A stretch of 64,000 nt of DNA from Octopus sinensis (GCF_006345805.1 NC_043014.1:14756001-14820000); one strand, 5' to 3'. Counted from the first letter of the stretch, positions 19,188-61,360 are shown. The notes: a model not told the origin generated them from the sequence alone. Translations and numbers: made by a program.

Positions 19188-19856
19188 CTCTTTACTCTTT
19201 TACTTGTTTCAGTCATTTGACTGCGGCCATGCTGGTGCACCGCCTTTAGTCGAGCAAATCGACCCCGGGACTTATTCTTTGTAAGCCCAGTACTTATTCT
19301 ATCGGTCTCTTTTTGCCGAACCACTAAGTGACGGGGACGTAAACACACCAGCATCGGTTGTCAAGCTATGCTAGGGGGACAAACACAGACACACAAACAC
19401 ACACACATACATATATATACATATATATGACAGGCTTCTTTCAGTTTCCGTCTACCAAATCCACTCACAAGGCATTGGTCGGCCTGGGGCTATAGCAGAA
19501 GACACTTGCCCAAGATGCCACGCAGTGGGACTGAACCCGGAACCATGTGGTTGGTTAGCAAGCTACTTACCACACAGCCACTCCTGTTAAATATTCTAAA
19601 TATTCTAAAATATATTTAAGAAATTTTAAATAAAATTATATTTTTTAAAATAAATAATATTTCAAAATGAATGCATATACATTTTTTAAAAAATGTAGGA
19701 GTGGCTGTGTGGTAAGTAGCTTGCTTACCAACCACATGGTTCCGGGTTCAGTCCCACTGTGTGGCACCTTGGGCAAATGTCTTCTAATTGAGCCTTGGGC
19801 TGACCAAAGCCTTGTGAGTAGATTTGGTAGACGGAAACTGAAAGAAGCCCGTCGTA

Positions 19857-19905
<49 letters not shown>

Positions 19906-20405
19906 ATGTGTGTGTGTTTGTGTTTCTGTGTTTGTCCCCCTAGCATTTCTTGACAACCGATGCTGGTGTGTTTATGTCCCCCGTCACTTAGCAGTTCAGC
20001 AAAAGAGACCTATAGAATAAGTACTGGGCTTACAAAGAATAAGTCCCAGGGTCAAGTTGCTTGATTAAAGTCAGTGCTCCAGCATGGCCGCAGTCAAATG
20101 ACTGAAACAAGTAAAAGAGAAAGAGATATGTGTAACTGTGAGCTTTGAAAACTCAGAAAAAACTCAGAAAAAACATAGCTTATTCGCTTCTTTATTCTTT
20201 TTATTCTGTTACTTGTTTCAGTCATTTGACTGCGGCCATGCTGGAGCACTGCCTTTAGTCGAGCAAATCGACCCCGGGACTTATTCTTTGTAAGCCCAGT
20301 ACTTATTCTATCAGTCTCTTTTGCCGAACCGCTAAGTGACGGGGACGTAAACACACCAGCATCGGTTGTCAAGCAATGCTAGGGGGAACAAACACAGACA
20401 TACAA

Positions 20406-20442
<37 letters not shown>

Positions 20443-20613
20443 CATATATATGACAGGCTTCTTTCAGTTTCCGTCTACCAAATCCACTCACAAGGCATTG
20501 GTTGGCCCGGGGCTATAGCAGAAGACACTTGCCCAAGATGCCACGCAGTGGGACTGAACCCGGAACCATGTGGTTGGTTAGCAAGCTACTTACCACACAG
20601 CCACTCCTGCGCC
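19188..20613. mobile_element. Three near-identical family-A SINEs in -,+,- orientation
   Basis: Copies at 19188-19586 (-), 19697-20125 (+) and ~20205-20613 (-). Confidence 0.88.
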
Positions 20614-21800: not shown

Positions 21801-22214
21801 TTAAACACAATCATTATCTGATACTAACACATTTAACAATGGTTCATTATAATGAATACAATATTTCAGAAACATAAGTTTTAATTCTTGTTCTTTCAGC
21901 TTACATTTCTATCCCAATAATAATGATGTATAATCCTCATTGATTATTTATTAATTTAATCTCCACATTTACTAATCTAAGTAGTGTTTTTGGTAATTGT
22001 CATTTGTATTGAATGCTGGTGGTATTATTTCCAAAATATGTATTTCTGTCAGTTGGGTCAAACATGAAATATATTTTAGAATCATCTAACATTCCTGTGT
22101 AGGTGTAGACACTCAAAGCTATTCTGAGTTCGATTCCAGGCATTGACCTGAATAATAATAATAACATCGAAAAATACCTTAGAAATGAGAACCCAGGTTC
22201 GGAATTTCCCCCAA

Positions 22215-22260
22215 GACACCTGATGAAGGCTGGAGGGTATATCAGTTGAAATGTTGTTTT
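22215..22260 (+). ncRNA. Degenerate minimal hammerhead motif in a SINE-like repeat
   Basis: GACAC-CTGATGA-A-GGCTG-loop-CAGTT-GAAA-TGTT-GTTTT. Differs from the inferred consensus (CAGCC-GAAACGTT-GTGTT) mainly by C>T changes. Confidence 0.55.
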
Positions 22261-22799
22261 AACAACAAACAAGATGAGGACAAATATCTGTCAAATGTAA
22301 ATAATGTAAATAATGTACATCATTCTTCATCTCTTATATATATAACTGTATTATCTAATTGGTACGGAACCAACATTAGACTTCAATGGAGACCAAAGCC
22401 TTGTGAGTCGATTTGGTAGACGGAAACTGAAAGAAGCCCGTTGTATGAATATATATATATATGTGTATGTGTGTATTACTTCTAGGGTTACTCTTTTACT
22501 CTTTTACTTGTTTCAGTCATTTTGACTATGGCTATGCTGGAGCACCGCCTTTTAGTCGAGCAAATCGACTCCAGGACTTATTCTTTGGAAGCCTAGTACT
22601 TATTCTATTGGCCTCTTTGGCTGAACCGCTAAGTTACGGGGACATAAACCCACCAGCATTGGTTGTCAAGTGATGCTGGGGAGACAAATACAGACACACA
22701 AACATATACACACACATACATATATACGAAGGACTTCTTTCAGTTTCTGTCTACCAAATCCACTCACAAGGCGTAGAAGACACTTGCCCAAGGTGCCAT

Positions 22800-26295: not shown

Positions 26296-27390
26296 ATAAG
26301 GTGGTGAGCTGGCAGAATTATTACTGTGTTACTGCTTAGTACCATTCGTCTGTCTTTATGTTCTGAGTTTGAATTTTGCTGAGGTCGACTTTGCTTTTCA
26401 TCCTTTTGGGGTCAATTAAAAAAGGAGCAGTTCAGAACTGCGGGTCAATGTAACTGAATTAGCCCCTTCCCCAAAATTGTTGGCCTTGTGCCAAAATTTG
26501 AAACCAGAAACAAAGCAATAGTCAGAGGTTTCAAATTATAATATTTAGCTCAGTCAGGGTGGTGAGCTATCAGAATTGTGACCACGACAGGCAAAATGCT
26601 TAGCAGTATTTCATCCATCTTTATGTTCAAAGTTTGAATTCCACCGAGGTCATTTTTGCCTTTCATCCTTTCAGGGTCAATAAATTAAGTACCAGTTGAG
26701 GTTGATGTAATCAGCATACCCATCTCCCAAAATTCCTGGCCTTTTACAGATATATGAAACAAATATTTAGCTCAGTAAGTTGGTGAGCTGTTAAAATCGT
26801 TACCATGCCAAGCAGTAGGTTGTCCGTCTTTACGTTCTGAGTTCAAATTATGACAAGGTTGACCTTGCTTTTCATCTTTTTGGGGTCAATAAAATAAGTA
26901 CCATTTGATCACTGCAGTCGATGTAATTGATCTACTCACTTCCCCAAAATTTACACTTTTACTTGTTTCAATCATTTGACTGCAGCCATGCTGGAGCACC
27001 GCCTTCAGTCGAGCAAATCGACCCCAGAACTTATTCTTTGTAAGCTTAGTGCTTATTCTATCAGTTTCTTCTGCTGAACCACTAAGTTACGGGGACATAA
27101 ACACACCAACATTGGTTGTCAAGCAATGTTGGGGGAGACAGAGACACACAAAGACACACACACACACATATATACATATACATATATACGACGGGCTTCT
27201 TTCAGTTTCCGTCTACTAAATCCACTCACAAGGCTTTGGTCGGCTCGAGGCTATAGTAGACGACACTTGCTCAAGGTGCCACACAGTGGGACTGAACCCG
27301 GAACCATGTGGTTGGTAAGCAAGCTACTTACCATACATCCACTACTGCGCCTGTTGCCAAAATTGTAAACCAATATATAGGAAACAAATT

Positions 27391-30884: not shown

Positions 30885-31267
30885 CTCTCTCTCTTTGGGA
30901 GAGGCACAAGCACTTACACGCACTTATACACACACGGCAGTAACTTCCACCTACCGAATTCAATCACAAAGCTCCGGTCGGCTCGGGACTATAGTGGAAG
31001 ACACCTACCCAAAGTGCCACGCAGTGGGACTGAACCCAAAACCATATAGCTAGGAAGCAAGCTCCCTAATATATACATATATATATATATATACACATAC
31101 ATATATGCATACATATATATATATGTATATATATATATGTAATATATATATATACATACATATATATATACACATACATATATGCATACATATATATATA
31201 TACACATACATATATGCATACATATATATATATATACACATACATATATACATACATATATGCATAC

Positions 31268-31298
<31 letters not shown>

Positions 31299-31735
31299 AT
31301 AATAAATATTAGGGAATAAATCCAAATTTACAGGGCAAAAAAATCAGATTTAGATAAAATCAATTTTATAGTAAAATATTATAAAAATATATTAGAGACA
31401 AAACCACTATTTGCAAAGAAGTTCACTGAAGATTGTTGATCAAGACAAGAAACGATTGTAGTGGCGGTTTTTTTGACTATTTATTAAAATTTTATGTATT
31501 GATTAAGTCTTTCCTTGTTTGTTTTGCAAAATAGTGGTTTTGTCTCTAATAATTTTTATATATGTATATATATATATATATGTATATATATATGTATATA
31601 TATATATATGTATATATATATGTATATATATATATGTATATATATATATGTATATATATATTATATATGTATATATATATATATAATATATATTTATATA
31701 TCTATTATATATATGTATATTATATATATATATAT

Positions 31736-31769
<34 letters not shown>

Positions 31770-31806
31770 TGTATATAATATATATATTATATATATATAT
31801 ATATTG

Positions 31807-31861
<55 letters not shown>

Positions 31862-31938
31862 TTATATATAATATATATATACTAATATATATATACATAT
31901 ATATACATATACATATATATAAATATACATATATATAC

Positions 31939-31969
<31 letters not shown>

Positions 31970-31996
31970 CATATATAATATATATATATATATATA

Positions 31997-32043
<47 letters not shown>

Positions 32044-32304
32044 CATATATATATTATACATATATATATATACATATATATATATATCTATATATATATA
32101 TAATGTGAAATAGAAAATGAATAATCTTGTAGTGATTAATCAAAAGTTTAACGATACCTTGGTAGCAAAAATCACAGCAGTAAACAGCACGGGTTGAGGT
32201 ACAACCATATGGTGTTGCAACCGTGCGTTGGTGCGGATAATTGAAATTAAAATATTATTGTGAATGAGAAATGGAGCTGAACGCAGATTGAACAGGAATC
32301 GTTT

Positions 32305-32403
32305 TATTTCATTCTCACACTACACGTGTTTCGAAAGGCACAATTTACCAAAATCCGATTGAATAATGGGACCATATTGTGTCTTTCTCTTCAGGAAGAA
32401 ATA
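32305..32403 (-). ncRNA. Inverted copy of the same hammerhead, with 6 extra nt (GTGTGA) after the cleavage site
   Basis: Reverse complement reads TATTTCTTC-CTGAAGA-GAAAGACACAAT...ATTGTGCCTTTC-GAAAC-ACGT-GTA-gtgtga-GAATGAAATA. Confidence 0.7.
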
Positions 32404-33042
32404 GGAAATCATTGGAAAAAACAAAACAGAACAGAGGCGGAGCAAAACAAATCGAACTAGGCTCCTAAGAGCCCATGGCGAAACTGTTTATCAGTGTATG
32501 TTGAGAACCGGTGGCTGAAGAATTTAACGGGTCAGGCATCGGTCAATCATGTGGGTGAGGGTGTGTAGATGTTCTTTGTGACCGAGAATAAAGTTCTGAC
32601 TATTTAAGGAATATTGGATGTTTTATAAGGGGCGAGAAAATATCTACTTAGAGACGTGTGTGTGTATACTGTTCTATATATGTGTGTGCTGGCGTAGGGG
32701 TAGAAAACATTTTTTGTGTACGTGTGTGCGTTTGATCGTTCGGCTGTCAGTGGCTACTGCAGTGAGAACCGTTGGGTGGCAGAAAAAGAAAATATATATT
32801 ATGTTTTATGTGTGTGTGTGTTCCATCCAATATTCCTTAAATAGTCAGAACTTTATTCTCGGTCACAAAGAACATCTACACACCCTCACCCACATGATTG
32901 ACCGATGCCTGACCCGTTAAATTCTTCAGCCACCGGTTCTCAACATACACTGATAAACAGTTTCGCCATGGGCTCTTAGGAGCCTAGTTCGATTTGTTTT
33001 GCTCCGCCTCTGTTCTGTTTTTGTTTTTTCCAATGGATTTCC

Positions 33043-33135
33043 TATTTCTTCCTGAAGAGAAAGACACAATATGGTCCCATTATTCAATCGGATTTTGGTA
33101 AATTGTGCCTTTCGAAACACGTGTAGAATGAAATA
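33043..33135 (+). ncRNA. Type I hammerhead ribozyme motif in a Penelope-like terminal repeat
   Basis: Stem I TATTTCTTC/GAA(T)GAAATA; core CTGAAGA at 33052-33058; stem II GAAAGACACAAT/ATTGTGCCTTTC; GAAA at 33114-33117; stem III AC-ACGT-GT; predicted cleavage after GTA (33125). Confidence 0.85.
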
Positions 33136-33816
33136 AAACGATTTCTGTTCAATCTGCGTTCAGCTCCATTTCTTCAATTCACCAATTATATATATATATA
33201 GATATATATATATACATACATATATATATATGTACATACATACATATATATATATGTATGTGTATATATGTATATATATATATTTATATATTATATACAT
33301 CATCATCATCATCGTTTAGCATCCGTTTTCCATGCTAGCATGGGTTGGACTATGTATGTATGTGTGTATGTATGTATGTATGTATGTGCATGAGTGTGTG
33401 TGTGTGTATAAATACACACAATACATGCAAAATGTACACATATATCTTTTATCATCAACTTCATAACTCCTCATAAGAATTTAACAGAGGAAAAGCAATA
33501 TTGATCCAGTGATATGTTGTTGATTTATAAGACAAAAATGTCAATTTAATAACAAGACAGAAAAAAAAATGACACATAAAAAACAAAAACAAATGGAAAT
33601 TAGAAGCCGCGACCATGAAAATGAATAAATTACACAATGTGATATGATTGTGAAGCCAATGAGAAAATCCAACAGTACTGGAATCAAATAGAGACTTATA
33701 ATATTAAAGAGATGGAACGGTGTTAGAGTTAGTTAACTTCACTTGGGGTAATTAGAAATTATGGGTTATGCTAGATAAAAAAAATAATAATGAAAAATGC
33801 AATAATAGGACTTTAC

Positions 33817-33890
33817 CGTTGTGAGAGCATCTCCTTGCTGATTGCAGGCCTCTTAATCAGTTCTTTGTAATGGTGGAATTCCCATAGAAG
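33817..33890 (-). CDS. DYNC2H1: Dynein-2 heavy chain exon (74 nt, phase 0/2): LLWEFHHYKELIKRPAISKEMLSQ(R)
   Basis: Not in the ORF track; found by reading the minus strand. Acceptor cttcttaatgcag, donor CG/gtaaag. Matches the KYKELVKRPTISKELMLER segment, and its phase fits the next exon (CG+A = Arg). Confidence 0.92.
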
Positions 33891-34005
33891 CTGCATTAAG
33901 AAGTAAATAATTTCATTGATTAATATCCATATGTAATATATAATATATATATATATAATATATATATATATGTATATATATAATATATATGTATATATAT
34001 ATATA

Positions 34006-35510
34006 TCATCATCATCATCATCATCATTTAGCGTCCGTTTTCCATGCTAGCATGGGTTGGACGGTTCAAATGGGGTCTGGGGAGCCCGAAGGGCTGCACC
34101 AGGCCAGTCAGATCTGGCAGTGTTTCTACAGCTGGATGCCCTTCCTAACGCCAACCACTCCGAGAGTGTAGTGGGTGATTTTATGTGCCACCGACAAGGG
34201 TGCCAGACGAGGCTGGCGAACGGCCACGCTCGGATGGTGTTTTTATGTGCCACCGACACAGGTGCCAGACGGCTGGCAGACGGCCACGCTCGGATGGTGT
34301 TTTATGTGCCACCGACACAGGTGCCAGATGAGGCTGGCAGGTGCCAGACGAGGCTGGCAGACGGCCACGCTCGGATGGTGTTTTTATGTGCCACCGACAC
34401 AGGTGCCAGATGAGGCTGGCGGACGGCCACGATCGGATGGTGTTTGTTACGTCCCCAAGCACGGAGGCCAGTCTATGCGGTACTGGCTACGGCCACGTTC
34501 GGATGATTTCTTCTGTGTGCCACCGGCACTGGTACACAAAGATACAAATTCCATTTATGCTATCTATTTTGATTGTTTTGATTTGATTTGATTTTCACTT
34601 GCCTCAACAGGTCTTCACAAGTGTCACTTGCCTCAACAGGTCTTCACAAGTGTCACAAGAAGGAAGGTATGCACAGGTGGACTGTCTACGTCCGGGTCTT
34701 CGGATGGTGTCTTTTATGTGCCACCGACACAGTGCCAGATGTGGCTGGCGAACGGCCACGATCGGATGGTTTTCTTGTTGCCACCGGTACTGGAACCACA
34801 AAGATACAAATTCCATTGATGTTCATCTATTTGATTTGGTTTGATTTTCACTTGCCTCAACAGGTCTTCACAAGTGTCACGCGTGTCCTTGTGTGCCACC
34901 GGTACTGAACCACAAAGATACAAATTCCATTGATGTTCATCTATTTGATTTGGTTGATTTTCACTTGCCTCAACAGTCTTCACAAGTGTCACGCGTGTCA
35001 ACACACTTGCCTCAACAGGTCTCCACAAGTGTCACACACTTGCCTCTGCCTCAACAGGTCTTCACAAAGTGTGTCACACACTGCCTCTGCCTCAACAGGT
35101 CTTCACAAGTGTCATAAGAGGAAGGTATGCACAGGTGGACTGACTACGTCGCCGGGTCTTTGGATGGTGTTTTTATGTGCCACCGACACAGGTGCCAGGT
35201 GAGGCTGGCGAACGGCCACGATCAGATGGTGTTTGTTGTGTGCCACCAGCACGGAGGCCAGTCGATGCGGTACCAGCTACGGCCACTTCGGATGGTTTTC
35301 TTGTGTGCCACCGGTACTGGAACCACAAAGATACAAATTCCATTGATATTCATCTATTTTGATTGGTTTGATTTTTGATTTTTGATTTTCACTTGCCTCA
35401 ACAGGTCTTCACAAGTGTCACACACTTGCCTCAACAGGTCTTCACAAGTGTCATAAGAGGGAGGTATGCACAGGTGGACTGACTACGTCGCCGGGTCTTC
35501 GGATGGTGTC
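34006..35510 (-). repeat. Third copy of the composite array (reverse orientation), in (TA)n
   Basis: Same (CAT)n end and the same subunits, with irregular internal duplications and deletions. Confidence 0.9.
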
Positions 35511-35513
35511 ATG

Positions 35514-35549
<36 letters not shown>

Positions 35550-35669
35550 TGTATATATATTATATGTATATATATATATGTATATATATATATAGGTATG
35601 TATATATATATAGGTATGTATATATATATATAGGTATGTATATATATATAGGTATGTATATATATTATG

Positions 35670-35700
<31 letters not shown>

Positions 35701-35846
35701 GTATGTATATATATATATATGTATAATATATATATGTATATATGTATATATATATAATATGTATATATATATATATGTATATATATATGTATATATATAT
35801 GTATATATATAGTAATATATATGTATATATATATGTATATGTAATA

Positions 35847-35889
<43 letters not shown>

Positions 35890-36071
35890 GTATATATATA
35901 TGTATTATGTATATATATATGTATATATATATATATATATATATGTATTATATTAGTTATATATATGTATATGTATATATATATGTATATATAAGTTATA
36001 TATATATGTATATATATGTATATGTATATATATATGTAATATATATGATATATATATGTATATATATATAG

Positions 36072-36109
<38 letters not shown>

Positions 36110-36191
36110 TATTATGTATATATATATATATGTATATATTATGTATATATGTATATGTATATAATATATTATATGTAAATATGTATATATG

Positions 36192-36225
<34 letters not shown>

Positions 36226-36732
36226 TGTATAATATATATGTATGTATATATATATATATTATATATATTATATGTATGTATATATATATATGATTATATA
36301 TATATATGTATATATATATATGTATATTATATATAATGTATAGATATATGTATATATATATATATGTATATAATATGATATATATATATGTATTATATAT
36401 GTATTATATATCTATATATATATTATATATGTATTATATATTATATATATATATATATATATAGGTATGTATATATATATATATATGTATATAATATATA
36501 TATGTATAGTATATATATGTATATATATATTATGTAATATATATATAGATATATATATGTATATATATATATTAGGTATGTATATATATATAGGTATGTA
36601 TATATATATAGGTAGGTATTATATATATATATGTATATCTAATAGGTATGTATATATATATATATGTATATATATAATATATATATATAGGTATGTATAT
36701 ATATATATAGGTATGTATATATATATATATGT

Positions 36733-36763
<31 letters not shown>

Positions 36764-36769
36764 TGTATG

Positions 36770-36867
<98 letters not shown>

Positions 36868-36937
36868 GTATATATATATATATGTATATATATATGTATA
36901 TAATATATATGTATATATATATATATGTATATATATG

Positions 36938-36978
<41 letters not shown>

Positions 36979-37060
36979 GATATAATATATATATATATGT
37001 ATATATGTATATATATCTATATATATATATATATAATATATATATTATTATATACATACA
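35511..37060. repeat. Compound (TA)n/(TATG)n microsatellite, ~1.5 kb
   Basis: Direct inspection. Similar arrays at ~24630-25000, 31070-31310 and 31560-32103. Confidence 0.95.
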
Positions 37061-37376
37061 CACACATATAGCAAATAAGAAAATGGAGGAGAACAAGAGG
37101 TGGTTCATCAACTTTTGGACATTAAAATGTTAACTTATTTATTTATTTATTAAGCTGATAATTATAATAACATACATACATGTAGCATATTAGTAATATA
37201 TAAGGATACCAGTAATTATTATAAGAAAACATGAATATAAATACACACACACACACACATATATATATATTTGTTGCTATTGGGCAAAAGTGTCACAAGT
37301 CCAAAGCGTTTTTTTTTTCAGAAAACATAAAAACGCATACCTTAGGAATGAGAACACAGGTTTGAAATTTCCCCAA

Positions 37377-37413
37377 GACACCTGATGAAGTCTGGAGGAT
37401 ATATCAGCCGAAA
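37377..37413 (+). ncRNA. Truncated copy of the 22.2-kb hammerhead family (3' half deleted)
   Basis: GACAC-CTGATGA-AGTCTG-loop-CAGCC-GAAA is joined directly to TGAGGACAAATATC. Flanks align with 22177-22306. Confidence 0.5.
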
Positions 37414-37798
37414 TGAGGACAAATATCCGTAAATGTAAATAATGTAAAAAATTAATGTAAAAACAGTTTCACCATTCCATTTCTTTTCATGTTAGTAACA
37501 GTTTCAGCTTAACATTAATACTTTGTCGGATGCATAAAATCGTAACTCCATGCATTTATATTTTCAGTCAGAAATATTTTTGCAAAACTGTCGTATGTGG
37601 GACTTACTACGCTTTTGAAAAATGCTAAACAGTTGTTCTACACTTTGACAATTTTCATATCTTGGCATCTGAAGCAGCTGGAGATACGATAGTTTGACCA
37701 AAAGAACAAGCTGTTGCAAGCAGAATTAGATACTAAAAGAAATGCATTCGGCGAAATTCGGACATCGACATTTTAACATAATAGCAATGATATGTATG

Positions 37799-44209: not shown

Positions 44210-45485
44210 TTGGCAGTGGCGATGTTGCTGGTAATGGTGGTAGTAGCACCAGCAGCAACAATAGTAGTAGTTGTGGTAATGGAGGTGTTGTTAATGATAC
44301 TAGTAGTAGTTGTAGTAGTAGTAGCAGCAATTTAACCCCAGTTTAGCCCAGACAGAACAGATTTATGATCAAAGACATTCAAGCCATGACAGCCCCATTT
44401 AAAACTTTATTTTTACACACAGTTTATGTAAAACTACATCTAATATATCTATATTTCCTTCCTGAGTAGGGTTGATATCTGAGGTAAATTTGGTTACTAT
44501 TTCTAATGGTTCAAGCACTGACATAAAAGTTTGCTCTTCAGAGACTCAAATGTAAAAAACTATTGTTGTTTAGCAAGATGCGTCATATATAGGTGGCAAG
44601 CTGGCAGAAATGTTAGCATGCCAGGCGAAATGCTTAGCGGTATTTCATTTGCTGTTACATTCTGAATTCAAATTCTGCCGAGGTTGACTTTGCCTTTCAT
44701 CCTTTTGGGCGTTGATTAAATAAGTACCAGTTACGCACTGAAGTCGATATAATTGACTTAATCCGTTTGTCTGTCTTTGTTTGTCCCCTCTGTGTGTAGC
44801 CCCTTGTGGGCAGTAAAGAAATAGGTATTTCGTCTGCCATTACATTCTGAGTTTAAATTCTGCTGAGGTCAACTTTGCCTTTCATCCTTCGGGATTGATA
44901 AATTAAGTGCCAGTTGTGTACTGGGGTCGATGTAATCGACTTAATCTCTTTGTCTGTCCTTGTTTGTCCCCTCTATGTTTAGCCCCCTGTGGGCAGTAAA
45001 GAAATAAGATGTGTCATATAATTACCTTATAATTAAAAGCACCTGTGCAGTACCACATAAAAGCACCTGTGCAGTACCACATAAAAGCACCTAGCACACT
45101 TTGTAAAGTAAATGGTGTTATGAGGGGTAACCAACAGTAGGAACCATGCCAAATCAGACTGGAGTCTGGTGCAACTCCCCCAGCTCTGTTCAAACTGTCC
45201 AACCCATGACGGCATGGACAACGGATATATGATGATGATGATGATGATTTATCTATAACTTGCTTTGGTCATTGGACAGCGGCCATGCTGGCGTACCACC
45301 TTGAAGGCTCCATGACAAATCAGACAACTGGAGCCGGTCAAACTGCCTGACCCATGTCAGCATGGACAATGGATATTAAATGACTCACTGAGGGTTGATC
45401 AGGGGAACAACAACAACAGTAGCAACAACAACAACAACAACAACAATCAATGGCAAGAACAACAATAATAAAATATTCTAATTAC

Positions 45486-45734
45486 CTGTTGTAAGTTTCC
45501 TTCCACATCTTGAATGTGGCGTTTCAGGACAGAGGCTACTTTCTGCTCGATGGGGGACAGCACTCGGTTGAACTGTACCACTGCAGCGTCCCAAAGTGGT
45601 TTGGTGAACGGATTGTAGAGAATGGGGTTAAGACCAGTAAACGACCGGAATACCTGCGACATGTTCAGTTCCTGTTGCTCCTGGGAAGTGAGCAAGTGCG
45701 TCAGTTGTTCATGGATTGAACGAAGAGTCAGGAC
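45486..45734 (-). CDS. DYNC2H1: Dynein-2 heavy chain internal exon (249 nt, phase 0/0): VLTLRSIHEQLTHLL...HIQDVEGNLQQ
   Basis: Peptide resembles the vertebrate DYNC2H1 tail segment (VLAIRTIHE...FTGLNPVQYNPYTEPLWKAAVSQY...), recalled from memory. Acceptor ctgcag (AG at 45736-45735), donor CAG/gtaat. Confidence 0.93.
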
Positions 45735-49200: not shown

Positions 49201-50327
49201 ATACTTATATACATATTTAATCTTTAGAACTTAAGAAGTAGAAAATAGCTATGCATGTATGCATATTTAATATATAACACCTGAGAAACTATAGTGTTAC
49301 ATACATATACACATAAGCACACAGCCACCAACAACACTACCTACTACCAATATCATCATCATCATTTTACTTCCCGTTTCCATGCCAGTATGGGTTAGAT
49401 GATCACCACTGTCAAAGTCAGAACATTCAAAGATACTGCTTGTCTAAATGGTTCGAGTTTTTTTAATTTCTGGATTAGGTACCATGTAAAAAGCACCCAT
49501 GCTGGTGCCATGTACAAAGCATGTGTGCTGATACCAAGTATAAGCACCTGGTGCTGGTGCCATGTAAAAAGCTCCCATACAGGTGGCACATAAAAGCACC
49601 TGTGTTGTTCGCTGCATAAACCCAGTATACTTTGTAAAGCGATTGGCATTAGGAAAAGCATCCAGCCATAGAAACCATACCAAAACTGACATTTGGAGCC
49701 TAGTGCAGCTCTCTGGCTTGCCAGATCCTGCCAAACTGTCCAACCCATGCCTGCATGGAAAATAGATGTTAAATGATGATGATGAGGAGGAGGAGGAGGA
49801 AGATCTACAGCTGGATACCCTTCCTAACACCAATCATTTTATGGAATGAATAGGGGGCATCAGTGCTGGGGTGGTTTTTGTGCCCTCAGCAAGACTAAAA
49901 GGTCCTCTTATCCCACACTTTAATTGGGTAGCCATATCCTCAACAAGACTAAAGATTAAAGAGTACTTTCAATCCCATATTTCCACTCACTTGCTAACCA
50001 CTTTACAGAATGATAGGCATGAGTAATAAAGGTATGAATAATAAGTGACAAGATTGATGGGTGATAGGGGCATTCCATATTTTGAGACACATACATTCAA
50101 GAACTGAGCAATGATGGAAGGCAACGTGACCCAACATGATGAATAGTGCCAGAATGATTGAGTTTAAAGGAGTAAGAGTATTATAGCAGTCAGAGTGATG
50201 ACTGACAGGAAAAATATGTATCAACGTACAGTCATAGGACACAAACCCATATCCCTCAAAGACTGTAGCTGAGTGCTTTACCATTAAGCTAAACTGCCCT
50301 AATTTCATTTAAGGTTGTGGGAAACCA

Positions 50328-50957
50328 CTAACAATCCTTTCTTTTGCTTTTTTTACATTTAGCGTAACAGTTCGTTTCCGCCGTAATGAGTTCAAATAGA
50401 CTCATCGGAAAAAGTAAAAAGAAATAGTCTATCACTTTACTCTCCTTGGAAAGTCTGTGGCTTGGTCCAGTTTCTTCAGAAAAATCACCGAAAGAAACAG
50501 TTTTTAAATTTTCACTCCATTCAGGTACCAATTCATTTTCTTTATCGCTGTCGGAGCTCTCGGATTCACTGTTTTCACTTTCGGAAATTGAAACATCAGA
50601 TTCATTATCAAATACCACGTGCTTTTTTTTTTTCAGTCATAGAGTTAAATTTATGAAAGTCTTCAGTAGAAAATCCTTCAAATTCTGACTTGCTGCTTGA
50701 TATAATGAAATTCGTATCCATTTTTTGTCAGAATTACAAATTTTGAAAACACAATAGGAACAAATTTCGGAAAAAAATCTCCCAAAATTCACGGAATTAA
50801 AATTACACTTCAATCGTAGTACAAAACTGTAGATGAACTGTTTACGAAGTATAATCACGTGTTTTCACGAATGTACTAAAGAGATTTGCTCTGATATTCT
50901 CATTTAAATATGAATAGGTAAATACGGGCGGGTTTGGGCGGTTTGGTAACGAAAGGG
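50328..50957 (-). mobile_element. piggyBac 5' end with a PGBD4-like transposase N-terminal fragment
   Basis: Minus-strand TTAA-CCCTTTCGTTACC terminus (TTAA at 50958-50961). ORF 50328-50618 has an acidic/Ser N-terminus and DYFFLLFP..LFELITAETNCYA. Confidence 0.78.
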
Positions 50958-51419
50958 TTAATTGTATCCTACAATACATTTCAACACTTCCAGTAAAAGA
51001 ACAAATATGTGTTTGTTTACATTTACACACACATGGTTGTTCTATAAAGCTAAAGTATGTTTTTCAGCATCTGATTTGATGGATGAATTTGTCAGCAGGC
51101 AGTTTAGCTTAATGGTAAAGCACTCAGCTACAGTCTTTGAGGTATATGGGTTTGTGTCCTATGACTGGTCGTTGATACATATTTTTCCATTTTGTCAGGG
51201 TAGTTTACCCAGTATTTTTGTTGTTCTAATGGCAACTCTGCGTTTGAAAAAATATCATCTTCTTATTTGTATCATACAATACAAAAAGATTTTTTTGTTT
51301 GTTTACTTTTATACACATTTTTTTTCTGCCTTTAACCCTCCGAAGGCGAGTATAGCCCACTTATAGTTGAATTCCATGTTGCATAATTTTTCACTTCTGT
51401 CCTTATACTCTGCCATGAA

Positions 51420-52963: not shown

Positions 52964-54067
52964 TACAAGGTGGTATCAAAAGGTTCACAGACTAGTATAT
53001 TTGTTGGCGTAGGATGGTTTACTAATTAAATGATTTTGAGATGCTATCCTCATGGTAAACAGAAGTTTATTCAGGTGTTAGCATATTCACAGCAAGTGCA
53101 TCAGAATGTTGAAGGGGAATGAAAAGACATGGATGAGGAAATAAAAACCTACATTTGCTGTACTCACTGGAAAAATAAAATATTAATCATCAACTGACAC
53201 TGTTTAATAAAAAATAACTTATTTACCTAAGTTTGAATATCATCTCCTTTGAAATAGTTACCTTGCACAGCAATACATAGGTCCCAGTGTTCCTCCCACT
53301 TTAGGAATCCAGCCTGGAAGTTATTTTCTGTAGGAGAGTCGAGAACCTCCTGCAATTTGCTCTAGATCTTGACAGCAGTAATAAAATGGCTATCTTTGAG
53401 GTGCATTTTCGTCTTGGGGTCAAGAGAGAAGTTCACAGGTGCTAAATCTGGTGAATAGTGCAGGTGTGCGAGCGACACCATGTTGTTTTTTTGGCAAGAA
53501 ATTCATGAGTGAGGAGAACCCAATTCTCCGTGTTCCACAGATCCAGTACTTTCATCACAATGTCCTCCCTCAAATGGTTCACAACATCACAGTAGATGTC
53601 TTGACTGATGGTCTGGCCCTGGGGGGGGGGGGTGAATTCTCAATGCACAAAACCACCTTTCTGGGGGTGATGATTGTGGCATGTCTTCCAGATCGCTCAT
53701 CTTCTTCTGGGGATGTTCTTCCGCTTTCGAAGTGCCTGTGCCACTCAAAGCATTGTATTTGACCCATTGCCTCATTGCCATAACCTTGCCAAATCATGCT
53801 TAATGTCTCCGTAGCAAACTTCCCAAGTTTTACACAAAATTTCACATTGGCTCCTGGTTCTAACTTCCTGTCCATGACAAAATTGCAGACTTTTTTTTGC
53901 GATCCCAAAAACACAGATTTCACAACTTGTGAAGTAAACACAGCCATGTCACTTGGCACACTGCTTCATGAAGGTCACTGCAAGCTCTCACTGCACACAC
54001 AACTATGTGCTGCTATATGTTGGTGTGCTACAGAACTAGTTCAGGTACTTTTTGATACCATCTCGTA
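52964..54067 (-). mobile_element. Internally deleted mariner transposon with ~33-bp TIRs and TA ends
   Basis: TIRs TACAAGGTGGTATCAAAAGGTTCACAGACTAGT and TACGAGATGGTATCAAAAAGTACCTGAACTAGT. Transposase remnants ANVKFCVKLGKFATET...FEWHRHFESGRTSPEEDERSGR and DLAPVNF...WDLCIAVQGNYFKGD. Confidence 0.9.
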
Positions 54068-58998: not shown

Positions 58999-60715
58999 GA
59001 AGAGTTGATGGAGGAAATAGCAAATAACATATTCAGATAAACATATTTTATCCTTATGAATGATCAAGAGCATATCAAAATAAAAGTGTTGTTGAGACTA
59101 GTTGTGACAAAACTAAAACTGATACACCTAACAGTTATTTGAAAATATAAGTGAAAGAAACATTTCCTCTATATAAAAATAAGTAGTTATGTAATATACA
59201 CTCAAAATAAAGCATTTATCATAGGCAGTAAGATAGAGATGTCCAATGGGATATCATAGTTATATTTGAATTAGGATATGACTTGACAGTTATAAGTGAA
59301 ATAAAAGTAATATAAGGTATGGTGTATATTTAAAGAAGTTATTTTTAAGGATAAAGAAATTTTTTGTGCGAGAATAAAAAATAAAAAAATAGTTAATATA
59401 GTTTTTATTAGGCTACTTGAATGCAAAATGGAAAAATTTTTTTAGTGTAAAAATTTATATTCATTTGTGTGAATTAAATATAAGATAAAGAGATAAAAAT
59501 AGAAGTATAGATGTTAATATTACAGAATTAAAATAGTAAATACTTGCTGTGGCTAAAAATATTGAAAAAAAACCGTTCCAGGAAAATGAAAGGCATTATA
59601 CACACACACACACACACACACACATATGCACATTAATATCAAGCAGTAAAGATGAGTACTCAACACCTCATTGGTAGAAAAATATTCTTTATTTGTGGAT
59701 TAACAAGGTCACCACTGGTTTCAGGCAGAGAGAAATCTCTCAACAATTATCAAGCCAGTCATATGGAACATTGGTATTCGCCTCCTTTTTGGATGAGAAT
59801 ATTCATCTCATCCAAGACAGATATGAGTAGCAATGTTCCCATGTGACAGGCTTGATAATTGCTGAGATTTCTCTTAGCATGAAACCGATGGTGGCCTTGT
59901 TAAAACACAAACAAAGAGCATGTATATATATCAATTAAAAGCAATGATACAGTATTTTGTTTTGCAATTATCATATACTGTTCTTTTACTCTTTTATTCT
60001 TTTACTTGTTTCAGTCACTTAACTGCAACCATGCTGGAGCACTGCCTTAAAGGGTTTTAGTCGAAGAAATCAACCCTAGGACTTGTTCTTTGTAAGTCTA
60101 GCATGTCTAATACTTATTCTATCAGTTCTCTTTTGCTAAACCACTAAGTTACGAGGAAATAAACACACCAGCATCAGCTGTGAAGCAATGGCAGAGAGAC
60201 AAATGCAGACACACACACACACATATATATATAGATATATGTACACATACACAACAAGCTTCTTTCAATTTCCATCACTCACAAGGCTTTGGTTGGCCTG
60301 ATGCTATAGAAGACACTTGGCCAAGGTGCCATGCAGTGGGACTGAACCTAGAACCATATGGTTGGAAAGCAAACTTCTTACCACACAGCCACGCCTACTA
60401 CTACGTATATCAATGGTTTACAAGTTAATATTGTGCTTTTTGTGTTAGTAGTACAAAGTTCTCATTCCTAAGTTTATCTCTACAGATTTTCCACTGAATT
60501 CAAAGCCAGTATTAAAAGTTACAACATTACGTACATGTCTACCTTGTATCGTATTGTTCACATACACATATTCATATATGGATCATCATAACTTTCAGTG
60601 ATGGCTCTGGATTCTATAGAATACCTGTAGAAATTAACTTAAAAATGAGAACAGACACACACACACACATATATATATCTGTAAATGTAATATGTGACAA
60701 TTATTCGGTAGCCAT

Positions 60716-60776
60716 GATAAAACTCCGAGTTTCGGATGCCGAGGTGGAAATCCCCACTGCCATCTCTTCAGTTATC
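60716..60776 (-). ncRNA. Type I hammerhead ribozyme motif (different family)
   Basis: Minus strand: GATAA-CTGAAGA-GATG..hairpin..CATC(C)-GAAA-CT-CGG-AG-TT-TTATC. Stem I is a perfect 5 bp, stem III is 3 bp, and the cleavage triplet is GTT. Confidence 0.78.
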
Positions 60777-61155
60777 CGGCCATCACAAAAGTGCTATGGA
60801 AAATGACTATTATACAAAGGGAAATTACTGTGTGATTGACCGTTATTAAGTCAAAAGAGCTATTCAAATGACCGCTAAGTAAGGGGAGGGAGTAATATAT
60901 ATATACATATCCTTTATTCTTTTACTTGTTTCAATCATTTGACTCTAGCCATGCTGGAGTACATCCTTGAAGGGTTTTAGTCGAACAAATCGACCCCAGG
61001 ACTTATTTTTAAAGCTTAGTACTTATTCTATTGGACTCTTTTGCTGAACCACTAAAATTACAGGGATGTAAACACACCAACACTGGTTGTCAAGTGGTGA
61101 TGATTGGCAAACACAGACACAAACATACACACACTCACACATATACATATATATA

Positions 61156-61360
61156 TATGAGGTGGTATCAAAAAGTTACCAGACTACTCCTGTAGATGGC
61201 AGCACAGAGTTGCATACACAGTGACATCTAGTGGTAACCTTCACGAGGCAGTGTGTTGAGGGACATCACTGTGTTTACTTCGCAGGTTGTAAAATTTGTA
61301 TTTTTGTGATCACATGTATGCTGTAGTCTGCGATTTTGTCATGGACAGAAACAAAGAGCC
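61156..61360 (+). mobile_element. 5' end of the same mariner family
   Basis: TATGAGGTGGTATCAAAAAGTTACCAGACT... aligns with the reverse complement of 53875-54067. Confidence 0.75.

What the first reader, a model, noticed from the sequence alone, without database searches (positions are those of the whole stretch)
60711..60781. Second, unrelated hammerhead on the sense strand of the presumed upstream DYNC2H1 intron
Seen: minus-strand GATAA/TTATC stem I (extendable through GCC/GGC), intact CUGAAGA and GAAA, a stem II hairpin (GATG/CATC with one extra C, plus GTGGGGA/TTTCCAC), a 3-bp stem III and a GUU triplet. It lies in a CpG-retaining ~230-bp insert between (CA/TA)n runs. Inferred: the first ~330 aa of DYNC2H1 are absent from the window, so this region is probably intronic and the ribozyme would be transcribed within the pre-mRNA. 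It has no adjacent antisense copy, so it could cut the intron co-transcriptionally.
Basis: partly seen in the sequence, partly recalled or inferred. Interest (0 to 1): 0.8.

Follow-up and report, generated by a model that had tools for sequence, protein, structure and literature searches.

The report
Hammerhead-like motif inside an octopus repeat
The hammerhead-ribozyme-like sequence is really there, but it sits inside a 217-base mobile-element copy that also occurs at an unrelated place in the Octopus bimaculoides genome, so it is most likely transposon cargo lying in a dynein gene intron and not a ribozyme evolved to cut that intron.

Summary
A type-I hammerhead descriptor finds this site only. 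It is expected by chance about 0.002 times per 64-kb window, which is still roughly 70 times per octopus-sized genome. The motif misses the strict consensus: an extra C lies between helix II and G12. No Rfam hammerhead model matches it. Helix III is 3 bp, and a conserved hairpin (UCCGA/UCGGA) competes with the core.

The "insert" is a discrete 217-nt element (60894..60678) followed by a (TA)n(TG)n run. A second copy, 83% identical, with the same 5' end and the same (TA)n tail, lies beside an unrelated GPCR gene in O. bimaculoides. Between the copies the core and helices I (inner), II (base) and III are identical. Distal helix II differs at 10 of 22 positions yet can still pair. There is no two-sided compensatory change, and the 3' tail beyond the motif is equally conserved.

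The anatomy fits the hammerheads of Penelope-like elements and their retrozyme derivatives. The site is on the sense strand, about 15 kb upstream of the DYNC2H1 exon for residues ~350-416, so it is probably intronic. Cleavage is untested and, for a lone copy, probably weak or absent. This is a new member of a known kind, of low to moderate interest.

The parts
60678..60894 (-). 217-nt dispersed repeat element (5' UUACUCCCUCCCC ... AUUUACAG 3') that carries the hammerhead-like motif in its 3' third
   Evidence: blastn and MAFFT against O. bimaculoides locus L014 13343-13566: 83-86% identity, sharp shared 5' boundary, shared 3' end. There is no second copy in the window.
60711..60780 (-). Type-I hammerhead-like motif (helix I open; helices II and III closed)
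   Evidence: Sequence read; the only descriptor hit in the window; no Rfam hammerhead hit.
60765..60771 (-). CUGAAGA box (C3-A9)
   Evidence: identical in the O. bimaculoides copy.
60735..60764 (-). Helix II: GAUG/CAUC base plus an imperfect distal hairpin; the distal 22 nt differ at 10 positions from the other copy
   Evidence: The O. bimaculoides copy forms UCGAGG/CCUCGA. In the same register the window copy forms U.G, G-C, G.U, G-C, G-C.
60734..60734 (-). Extra C between C11.1 and G12, a departure from the hammerhead consensus that is present in both copies
   Evidence: The strict descriptor fails because of it.
60730..60733 (-). GAAA box (G12, A13, A14, A15.1)
60722..60730 (-). Helix III/loop 3, ACUCGGAGU: 3 bp plus a triloop, palindromic apart from the central base. 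It is also the 3' arm of the competing hairpin UCCGA-AAC-UCGGA (60736..60724).
60720..60721 (-). Predicted scissile bond, 3' of U17 (60721), before U1.1 (60720)
   Evidence: Follows from standard hammerhead numbering applied to the sequence. Not tested.
60650..60677 (-). (AU)n(GU)n microsatellite directly after the element's 3' end. The O. bimaculoides copy has an (AU)n-rich run at the same place.
45450..45656 (-). Nearest recognisable DYNC2H1 exon downstream of the motif (human residues ~350-416); approximate limits of the aligned peptide
   Evidence: PDB 6rla chain residues 556-622, E 1.7e-16; ORF.

Best explanation
The motif is the hammerhead module of a short (217-nt) non-autonomous retroelement family of octopus genomes. 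One solitary copy landed, in sense orientation, beside or within a (TA)n tract inside a long DYNC2H1 intron. The build is that of the type-I hammerheads carried near the 3' ends of Penelope-like elements and of their retrozyme derivatives. Helix I is short and open, helix II is long and variable, and helix III is very short and palindromic, so it is stable only when two copies pair. By analogy with published work, such a hammerhead would process multimeric element transcripts. Here it is a lone fossil copy with an extra C at the helix II/G12 junction, and it has lost CpGs in distal helix II. I therefore expect little or no self-cleavage of the DYNC2H1 pre-mRNA and no host function. Shown: the motif, the element boundaries, the second copy, the pattern of conservation and the strand. 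Inferred: retroelement mechanism, kinship with Penelope-like elements, low activity and intronic position.
For: The element is a discrete unit with a paralogue at an unrelated locus, 1.5 kb downstream of a 7tm_2 receptor gene on O. bimaculoides CM046609.1. Both copies end in AUUUACAG followed by a (TA)n-rich microsatellite. (TA)n is a preferred target of Penelope-like elements, and their hammerheads lie near the 3' end (PMC8557442). Substitutions between the copies: 5' part 23/115, hammerhead core plus helices I, II-base and III 2/48 (both in outer helix I), distal helix II 10/22, 3' tail 2/32. Fisher p is 0.005 for the hammerhead-essential positions against the rest. All 21 pairs form in the O. 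bimaculoides copy and 20 in the window copy. A long helix II, a 4-5 bp helix I, a palindromic helix III, mostly single scattered copies and poor in-vitro activity of single motifs are the published traits of animal Penelope-element hammerheads (PMC4209133). Retrozyme monomers are dispersed, and about 43% are intronic in Xenopus (bioRxiv 10.64898/2026.07.22.740005). Cephalopod genomes hold Penelope elements and hundreds of Hammerhead_1 hits (PMC6962438). Chance expectation is about 0.002 per window.
Against: Only two copies could be obtained, so family size and type are unproven. No double compensatory change supports any helix. The 3' tail outside the motif is as conserved as the core, so the conservation is not specific to the hammerhead. 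No Rfam hammerhead model matches either copy, even at E<=10 in a 300-900-nt search. The extra nucleotide is on the 3' strand (11.1/12), not between A9 and G10.1 as in published Penelope-element hammerheads. No Penelope reverse-transcriptase or GIY-YIG remnant and no tandem partner lies nearby. The O. bimaculoides copy is not flanked by (TA)n on its 5' side.
Confidence: 0.6

Rival explanations
1. Chance look-alike: the repeat never encoded a ribozyme. The CUGAAGA and GAAA boxes and the surrounding complementarity arise by accident around an ordinary conserved hairpin (UCCGA-AAC-UCGGA) in the 3' region of a transposon.
For: The strict consensus is not met because of the extra C. No Rfam hammerhead hit. 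The hammerhead fold is 3-7 kcal/mol less stable than alternatives, with an equilibrium fraction of about 2e-3 (window) and 6e-6 (O. bimaculoides). There are no compensatory changes. The neighbouring 3' tail is just as conserved. About 70 such relaxed-descriptor hits are expected by chance in a 2.7-Gb genome, which matters if the first stage screened many windows.
Against: Expectation per window is only 0.0017. All 11 invariant core nucleotides, A15.1-U16.1, a non-G at 17 and three helices in the right order are present and unchanged between copies that differ at 17% of positions. The one hypervariable stretch is exactly the part of a hammerhead that is free to vary, and it keeps its pairing potential. 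The context (short retroelement, (TA)n, 3'-terminal position, palindromic helix III) is the known home of animal type-I hammerheads.
Confidence: 0.27
2. One reading: an active intronic ribozyme that cleaves nascent DYNC2H1 pre-mRNA co-transcriptionally, with a regulatory effect on the gene.
For: Sense-strand position, about 15 kb upstream of the exon for residues ~350-416, with no upstream exon detected in the window. The core is intact. Conserved intronic hammerheads (HH9, HH10) are known in amniotes (cited in PMC7229834).
Against: The same element lies at an unrelated locus, outside that gene's single coding exon and on the opposite strand, so the motif was not shaped at this locus. It is a single copy with a 3-bp helix III, an extra C and decayed CpGs in helix II. 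Single motifs of this type showed no detectable cleavage in vitro (PMC4209133). From general knowledge: ribozyme cleavage inside an intron need not disturb splicing, because the exons stay tethered to the polymerase. Retrozymes are depleted from introns, which suggests active copies there are selected against.
Confidence: 0.08

Closest known systems
Hammerheads of Penelope-like elements (min-HHR / palindromic helix III variants; Cervera & de la Pena 2014, PMC4209133)
   Same: Type-I topology, 5-bp helix I, long and variable helix II with a G-C pair at its base, and a short palindromic helix III/loop 3. The motif lies near the 3' end of a retroelement next to (TA)n. Copies are mostly solitary and scattered, and the core carries one extra unpaired nucleotide at the helix II junction.
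   Different: The extra nucleotide is on the 3' strand (between 11.1 and G12), not between A9 and G10.1. Helix III is 3 bp plus a triloop, rather than absent or 1-2 bp. No homology to a Penelope pLTR or ORF could be tested or seen. The element is only 217 nt with a fixed 5' end.
Animal non-LTR retrozymes (Cervera & de la Pena 2020, PMC7229834; Li, Clavereau & Pollet 2026 preprint)
   Same: A short (about 170-400 nt) non-coding unit with one type-I hammerhead. Monomeric derivatives are dispersed through genomes, many of them in introns. They are thought to be mobilised by Penelope-like elements.
   Different: No tandem repeat here. The unit is not bounded by the cleavage site, which lies 42-43 nt from the 3' end. 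The predicted RNA is not unusually structured (z +1.25 and -1.22).
Schistosoma Sm-alpha and related short interspersed elements / satellite DNAs with hammerheads (Rfam Hammerhead_1, RF00163)
   Same: A short dispersed repeat carrying a type-I hammerhead with a weak helix III.
   Different: No RF00163 match at E<=10. No tRNA-like or other pol III head detected in the element.
Conserved intronic hammerheads HH9/HH10 of amniotes (RF02275, RF02277)
   Same: Sense-strand position in an intron of a protein-coding gene.
   Different: Those are single-locus elements conserved across orthologous introns. This one is a repeat copy, with no match to those models and no evidence of orthologous conservation.

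Membership tests
Hammerhead ribozyme, type I | Conserved box C3-U4-G5-A6-N7-G8-A9 | tested here: met
   CUGAAGA at 60771..60765; identical in the second copy.
Hammerhead ribozyme, type I | Conserved G12-A13-A14 directly following helix II (C11.1 adjacent to G12, G10.1-C11.1 pair) | tested here: not met
   GAA is present, but one extra C (60734) separates CAUC from G12. The strict descriptor gives no hit. A G-C pair can close helix II if a C is bulged. Tolerance of a bulge on this strand is not known to me.
Hammerhead ribozyme, type I | A15.1-U16.1 pair and a non-G nucleotide at position 17 | tested here: met
   A60730-U60722 and U60721.
Hammerhead ribozyme, type I | Three helices around the core, helix I open-ended | tested here: met
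   Helix I is 5 bp plus 3 bp. Helix II is 4 bp plus a distal hairpin. Helix III is 3 bp plus the triloop CGG. Helix III is thermodynamically marginal.
Hammerhead ribozyme, type I | Match to a curated covariance model (RF00163, RF02275, RF02277, RF00008, RF02276) | tested here: not met
   No hammerhead family was listed at gathering score, at E<=10 on 901 nt, or on the second copy. It was also absent from the 150 best-scoring of the 186 whole-window matches at E<=5; the 36 lower-scoring ones were not shown.
Hammerhead ribozyme, type I | Covariation supporting the helices | tested here: inconclusive
   With two sequences only: 0 two-sided changes, 3 one-sided wobble changes and 1 broken pair.
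Hammerhead ribozyme, type I | Site-specific self-cleavage giving 2',3'-cyclic phosphate and 5'-OH ends | not testable with these tools
   Needs transcription and cleavage assays or end-specific RNA sequencing.
Penelope-like element hammerhead / retrozyme derivative | Hammerhead near the 3' end of a retroelement unit, with insertion at (TA)n or other microsatellites | tested here: met
   The motif ends about 33 nt, and the predicted cut lies 42-43 nt, before the element's 3' end. A (TA)n run follows in both copies, and in the window copy one also precedes it. The criterion comes from PMC8557442.
Penelope-like element hammerhead / retrozyme derivative | Unpaired nucleotide between A9 and G10.1 | tested here: not met
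   A9 is followed directly by G10.1. The unpaired nucleotide is on the opposite strand. The criterion comes from PMC4209133.
Penelope-like element hammerhead / retrozyme derivative | Palindromic positions 15.x-16.x / loop 3 (dimer-competent helix III) and an enlarged helix II | tested here: met
   ACUCGGAGU against its reverse complement ACUCCGAGU is palindromic except for the central base. Helix II spans 30 nt.
Penelope-like element hammerhead / retrozyme derivative | Sequence homology to a pLTR, or linkage to an RT / GIY-YIG ORF; or a tandem array (retrozyme) | tested here: not met
   No second copy or array in 86 kb. The only transposon ORFs seen nearby are mariner-, RTE- and piggyBac-like. 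Homology to curated Penelope consensus sequences could not be tested, because no repeat library or octopus genome search was available.
Conserved host intronic ribozyme (HH9/HH10 type) | Presence in the orthologous intron across species | not testable with these tools
   No DNA-level search of cephalopod genomes was available. The one relative found is paralogous.

The most novel reading that the evidence does not exclude
The 217-nt unit is an undescribed cephalopod retrozyme-like family whose hammerhead works with a bulged C between C11.1 and G12, a core-junction variant not reported so far. Sense-oriented intronic copies such as this one would then nick host pre-mRNAs, or release small circular or linear RNAs from introns.
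Probability: 0.12. Interest if true: 0.55.

Novelty: new member of a known kind. Interest (0 to 1): 0.25.

Why it matters
If the reading is right, this is one more case of a rule already established for animals: type-I hammerheads are cargo of Penelope-related retroelements, and solitary copies litter introns without being host ribozymes. That guards against over-reading intronic hammerhead hits. What is modestly new is an apparently uncatalogued octopus element family, and a core-junction variant (extra C between 11.1 and 12) kept in both copies. If that variant is active, it would widen the sequence descriptors used to find hammerheads. The finding also exposes an annotation artefact in an O. 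bimaculoides gene model.

Tried and rejected
1. Rfam at gathering and at permissive E-values, on the window and on the second copy, gave no hammerhead hit.

2. One metagenome scan with CTGANGAGATGN{15,30}CATCCGAAAC gave 13 hits. All are unrelated sequences, about the number expected by chance.

3. Scans of bacterial/archaeal genomes and of viral contigs with a 24-mer from the conserved 3' half gave 0 hits.

4. Protein searches with DYNC2H1 exon peptides, to name the species and reach orthologous loci, gave no close relatives.

5. Exact look-ups of window ORFs next to the motif found nothing on record. P0004 itself was also not on record.

6. An HMMER search of 1.84 billion representative proteins with the antisense translation of the motif gave one spurious repeat protein.

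7. A covariance model built from the two copies found no further copy in the window or in L014.

8. A rod-like, viroid- or retrozyme-like fold of the whole element was rejected (z +1.25 and -1.22).

9. Dimer cofolding gave no clear double-hammerhead structure.

10. The repeated CUGAUGA...GAAA stretches at 22220-22251 and 37382-37413 were considered as Penelope-type minimal hammerheads and rejected: G at position 17, and no helix I found by the descriptor.

11. A tRNA, 5S or 7SL head that would make the element a classical SINE was not found.

Full report
**Observation**

The minus strand from 60780 to 60711 reads GCCGGAUAA CUGAAGA GAUG GCAGUGGGGAUUUCCACCUCGG CAUC C GAAA CUCGGAGU U|UUAUCAUGGC.
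- Helix I is GAUAA/UUAUC, extended by GCC/GGC across a small internal loop.
- The CUGAAGA and GAAA boxes are intact.
- Helix II has a GAUG/CAUC base and a distal hairpin.
- One extra C lies between helix II and G12.
- Helix III is 3 bp (ACU/AGU) closed by CGG.
- GUU precedes the predicted cut between 60721 and 60720.

**Is it more than chance?**

I wrote a descriptor: helix I >=5 bp, CUGANGA, helix II >=4 bp, 0 or 1 inserted nucleotide, GAAA, helix III >=3 bp including A15.1-U16.1, and position 17 not G.
- It hits this site and nothing else in the window. None of 300 dinucleotide shuffles gave a hit. A looser scan for minimal hammerheads also found only this site.
- In 76 Mb of first-order Markov sequence there were 0 strict hits and 2 hits with the insertion. 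That is about 0.0017 per window and roughly 70 per 2.7-Gb genome.
- So the motif is improbable in one window. It is not improbable if a whole genome was screened.
- With no insertion allowed, the real site fails.

**Tests against known models, and folding**

- No Rfam hammerhead family reaches its gathering score. None appears at E<=10 in a 901-nt search. None is among the 150 best-scoring whole-window matches at E<=5; 36 lower-scoring matches were not listed. None appears for the second copy.
- The 81-nt stretch does not fold unusually well (z -0.5).
- The hammerhead secondary structure scores -11.3 kcal/mol. The best structure containing helices I, II-base and III scores -15.8. The unconstrained minimum is -18.9. 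For the O. bimaculoides copy the values are -11.3, -12.2 and -19.0.
- The main competitor is a perfect 5-bp hairpin, UCCGA-AAC-UCGGA. It uses the extra C, G12, A13 and the helix III strand, and it is conserved in both copies.
- Nearest-neighbour energies ignore tertiary contacts, so this argues for a weak monomeric ribozyme, not an impossible one.

**What the 'insert' is**

blastn of the region against the window shows that only the microsatellite flanks and the neighbouring repeats recur; the core does not. The flanks are:
- a very abundant repeat family, with copies at 59990-60396 and 60910-61160 and more than 20 in the window;
- a palindromic element at 60457-60654.

A six-frame translation of 60688-60897 found one protein. 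It is UniProt A0A0L8HW34 of Octopus bimaculoides, and its last ~40 residues match the antisense translation of the motif. Its cluster mate XP_014768921.1 maps to chromosome CM046609.1, which gave locus L014.

L014 13343-13566 aligns with window 60895-60671 at 86% identity. The alignment shows a unit of 217 columns:
- It has the same sharp 5' end in both copies (UUACUCCCUCCCC).
- It has the same 3' end (AUUUACAG).
- A (TA)n-rich microsatellite follows in both copies.
- The flanks are otherwise unrelated, and the host gene there is a 7tm_2 receptor.

The element is therefore a dispersed repeat, and octopus is the likely source of the window.

**Pattern of change between the two copies**

| Segment | Differences |
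|---|---|
| 5' part | 23 / 115 |
| Boxes plus helices I, II-base and III | 2 / 48 |
| Distal helix II | 10 / 22 |
| 3' tail beyond the motif | 2 / 32 |

- Both changes in the 48 hammerhead-essential positions lie in the outer part of helix I. One keeps pairing as a G.U pair.
- Fisher p is 0.005 for the hammerhead-essential positions against the rest, and 0.03 when distal helix II is left out.
- The O. bimaculoides copy forms a clean UCGAGG/CCUCGA distal stem. In the same register the window copy keeps five of the six pairs, two of them as G.U.
- Four of the ten distal differences are CpG to TpG or CpA changes in the window copy.
- CpG observed/expected is 1.43 in the O. bimaculoides copy, 0.79 in the window copy and 0.47 in the window as a whole.
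- There is no two-sided compensatory change. The non-hammerhead 3' tail is equally conserved.

The data are therefore compatible with constraint on a ribozyme, but they do not prove it.

**Comparison with the literature**

- Cervera and de la Pena (PMC4209133) describe the hammerheads of animal Penelope-like elements. They are type I with a 4-5 bp helix I, an enlarged and variable helix II and a conserved G10.1-C11.1 pair. They carry one unpaired nucleotide at the helix II junction, between positions 9 and 10.1. Positions 15-16 and loop 3 are palindromic. Most copies are solitary, and single motifs show no detectable activity.
- Craig et al. (PMC8557442) place these hammerheads near the 3' ends of the elements and report (TA)n as a preferred target.
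[quoted passage not shown] They find dispersed monomers, about 43% of them intronic in Xenopus.
- The giant squid genome has Penelope elements and 235 Hammerhead_1 hits (PMC6962438).

The present motif shares the build and the context. It differs in three ways. The extra nucleotide is on the other strand of the junction. No link to a Penelope sequence could be tested. No tandem partner is present. The element has no detectable pol III head and no unusually stable overall fold.

**Gene context**

- The peptide encoded at ~45.5 kb on the minus strand matches human DYNC2H1 at chain residues 556-622 of PDB 6rla. After subtracting the ~206-residue tag, that is residues ~350-416.
- The exons at 15.2 and 12.0 kb match later residues. 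The gene therefore runs from high to low coordinates on the minus strand.
- Unique minus-strand ORFs between 45.9 and 64 kb match only a mariner transposase.

The motif is thus on the sense strand, about 15 kb upstream of that exon, and is most simply intronic. The poorly conserved N-terminal exons could have been missed, and the 5' end of the gene is outside the window.

**Verdict**

The interpretation as a dedicated co-transcriptional intron cutter is not supported.
- Most likely (about 0.6): a passenger copy of a short hammerhead-bearing retroelement of the Penelope/retrozyme kind, with weak or no activity as a monomer.
- Next (about 0.27): an accidental look-alike within a transposon.
- Least likely (about 0.08): a working host ribozyme.

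Cleavage assays and a genome-wide census of the family would settle it.

Noticed in passing
L014 13320-13469 (O. bimaculoides CM046609.1); UniProt A0A0L8HW34: The last ~40-50 residues of this predicted 472-aa octopus protein (...IYIYTYISVNIICDNYSVAMIKLRVSD...) are a translation of a (TA)n microsatellite plus the antisense strand of the hammerhead-bearing repeat, 1.5 kb downstream of the single-exon gene. The RefSeq model XP_014768921.1 (615 aa) lacks this tail, so it is probably an annotation artefact.
   Followed up: partly
window 60457-60654: A ~200-bp palindromic, MITE-like element immediately downstream of the microsatellite. It is self-complementary (67% over 202 nt) and gives sub-threshold matches to plant microRNA precursor models on both strands.
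   Followed up: no
window 59990-60396, 60910-61160 and more than 20 other places (e.g. 26950-27342, 19190-19585, 20200-20608): A very abundant short repeat built as a ~250-bp part, an internal (TG)n(TA)n microsatellite, then a ~90-bp part. It accounts for many of the microsatellites in the window, and one copy abuts the 5' end of the hammerhead-bearing element.
   Followed up: partly
window 22150-22330 (+) and 37310-37490 (+): Two copies of another repeat containing CUGAUGA-A-GGCUG...CAGYY-GAAA. It looks like hammerhead boxes with an extra A after A9, but has G at position 17 and no helix I, so it fails the descriptors. It may be what inflates the CUGANGA...GAAA count (12 observed against 3.1 expected).
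   Followed up: partly
window 50227-50297 (-) and 51098-51170 (+): Two tRNA-like sequences in inverted orientation (Rfam tRNA 30.8 and 28.3 bits) lie within longer inverted repeats (ORFs 50003-50308 and 50962-51366 share ...FSLMVKHSATVFE.YGFVSYD...). They flank a piggyBac-like N-terminal ORF (50331-50636).
   Followed up: no
window 53230-53965 (-): A mariner-type transposase remnant (weak PDB match to Mos1 transposase, E 0.006), broken across frames.
   Followed up: no
window 19512-19770: A strong perfect-palindrome element that matches the same plant microRNA precursor model on both strands (83.7 and 76 bits, below threshold). It is probably another MITE-like inverted repeat.
   Followed up: no
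window ~31000-37100: About 6 kb dominated by degenerate (TA)n/(TATG)n-type simple repeats, interrupted by copies of a GC-richer repeat (34050-35400).
   Followed up: no
window 60784-60788 with 60694-60698 (-): A possible long-range helix enclosing the motif: UGUGA (upstream) with UCACA (downstream). In the O. bimaculoides copy the central U-A is replaced by C-G, the only two-sided change seen, but a neighbouring pair is broken. It was read by eye from alignment A1 and was not part of the modelled structure.
   Followed up: no
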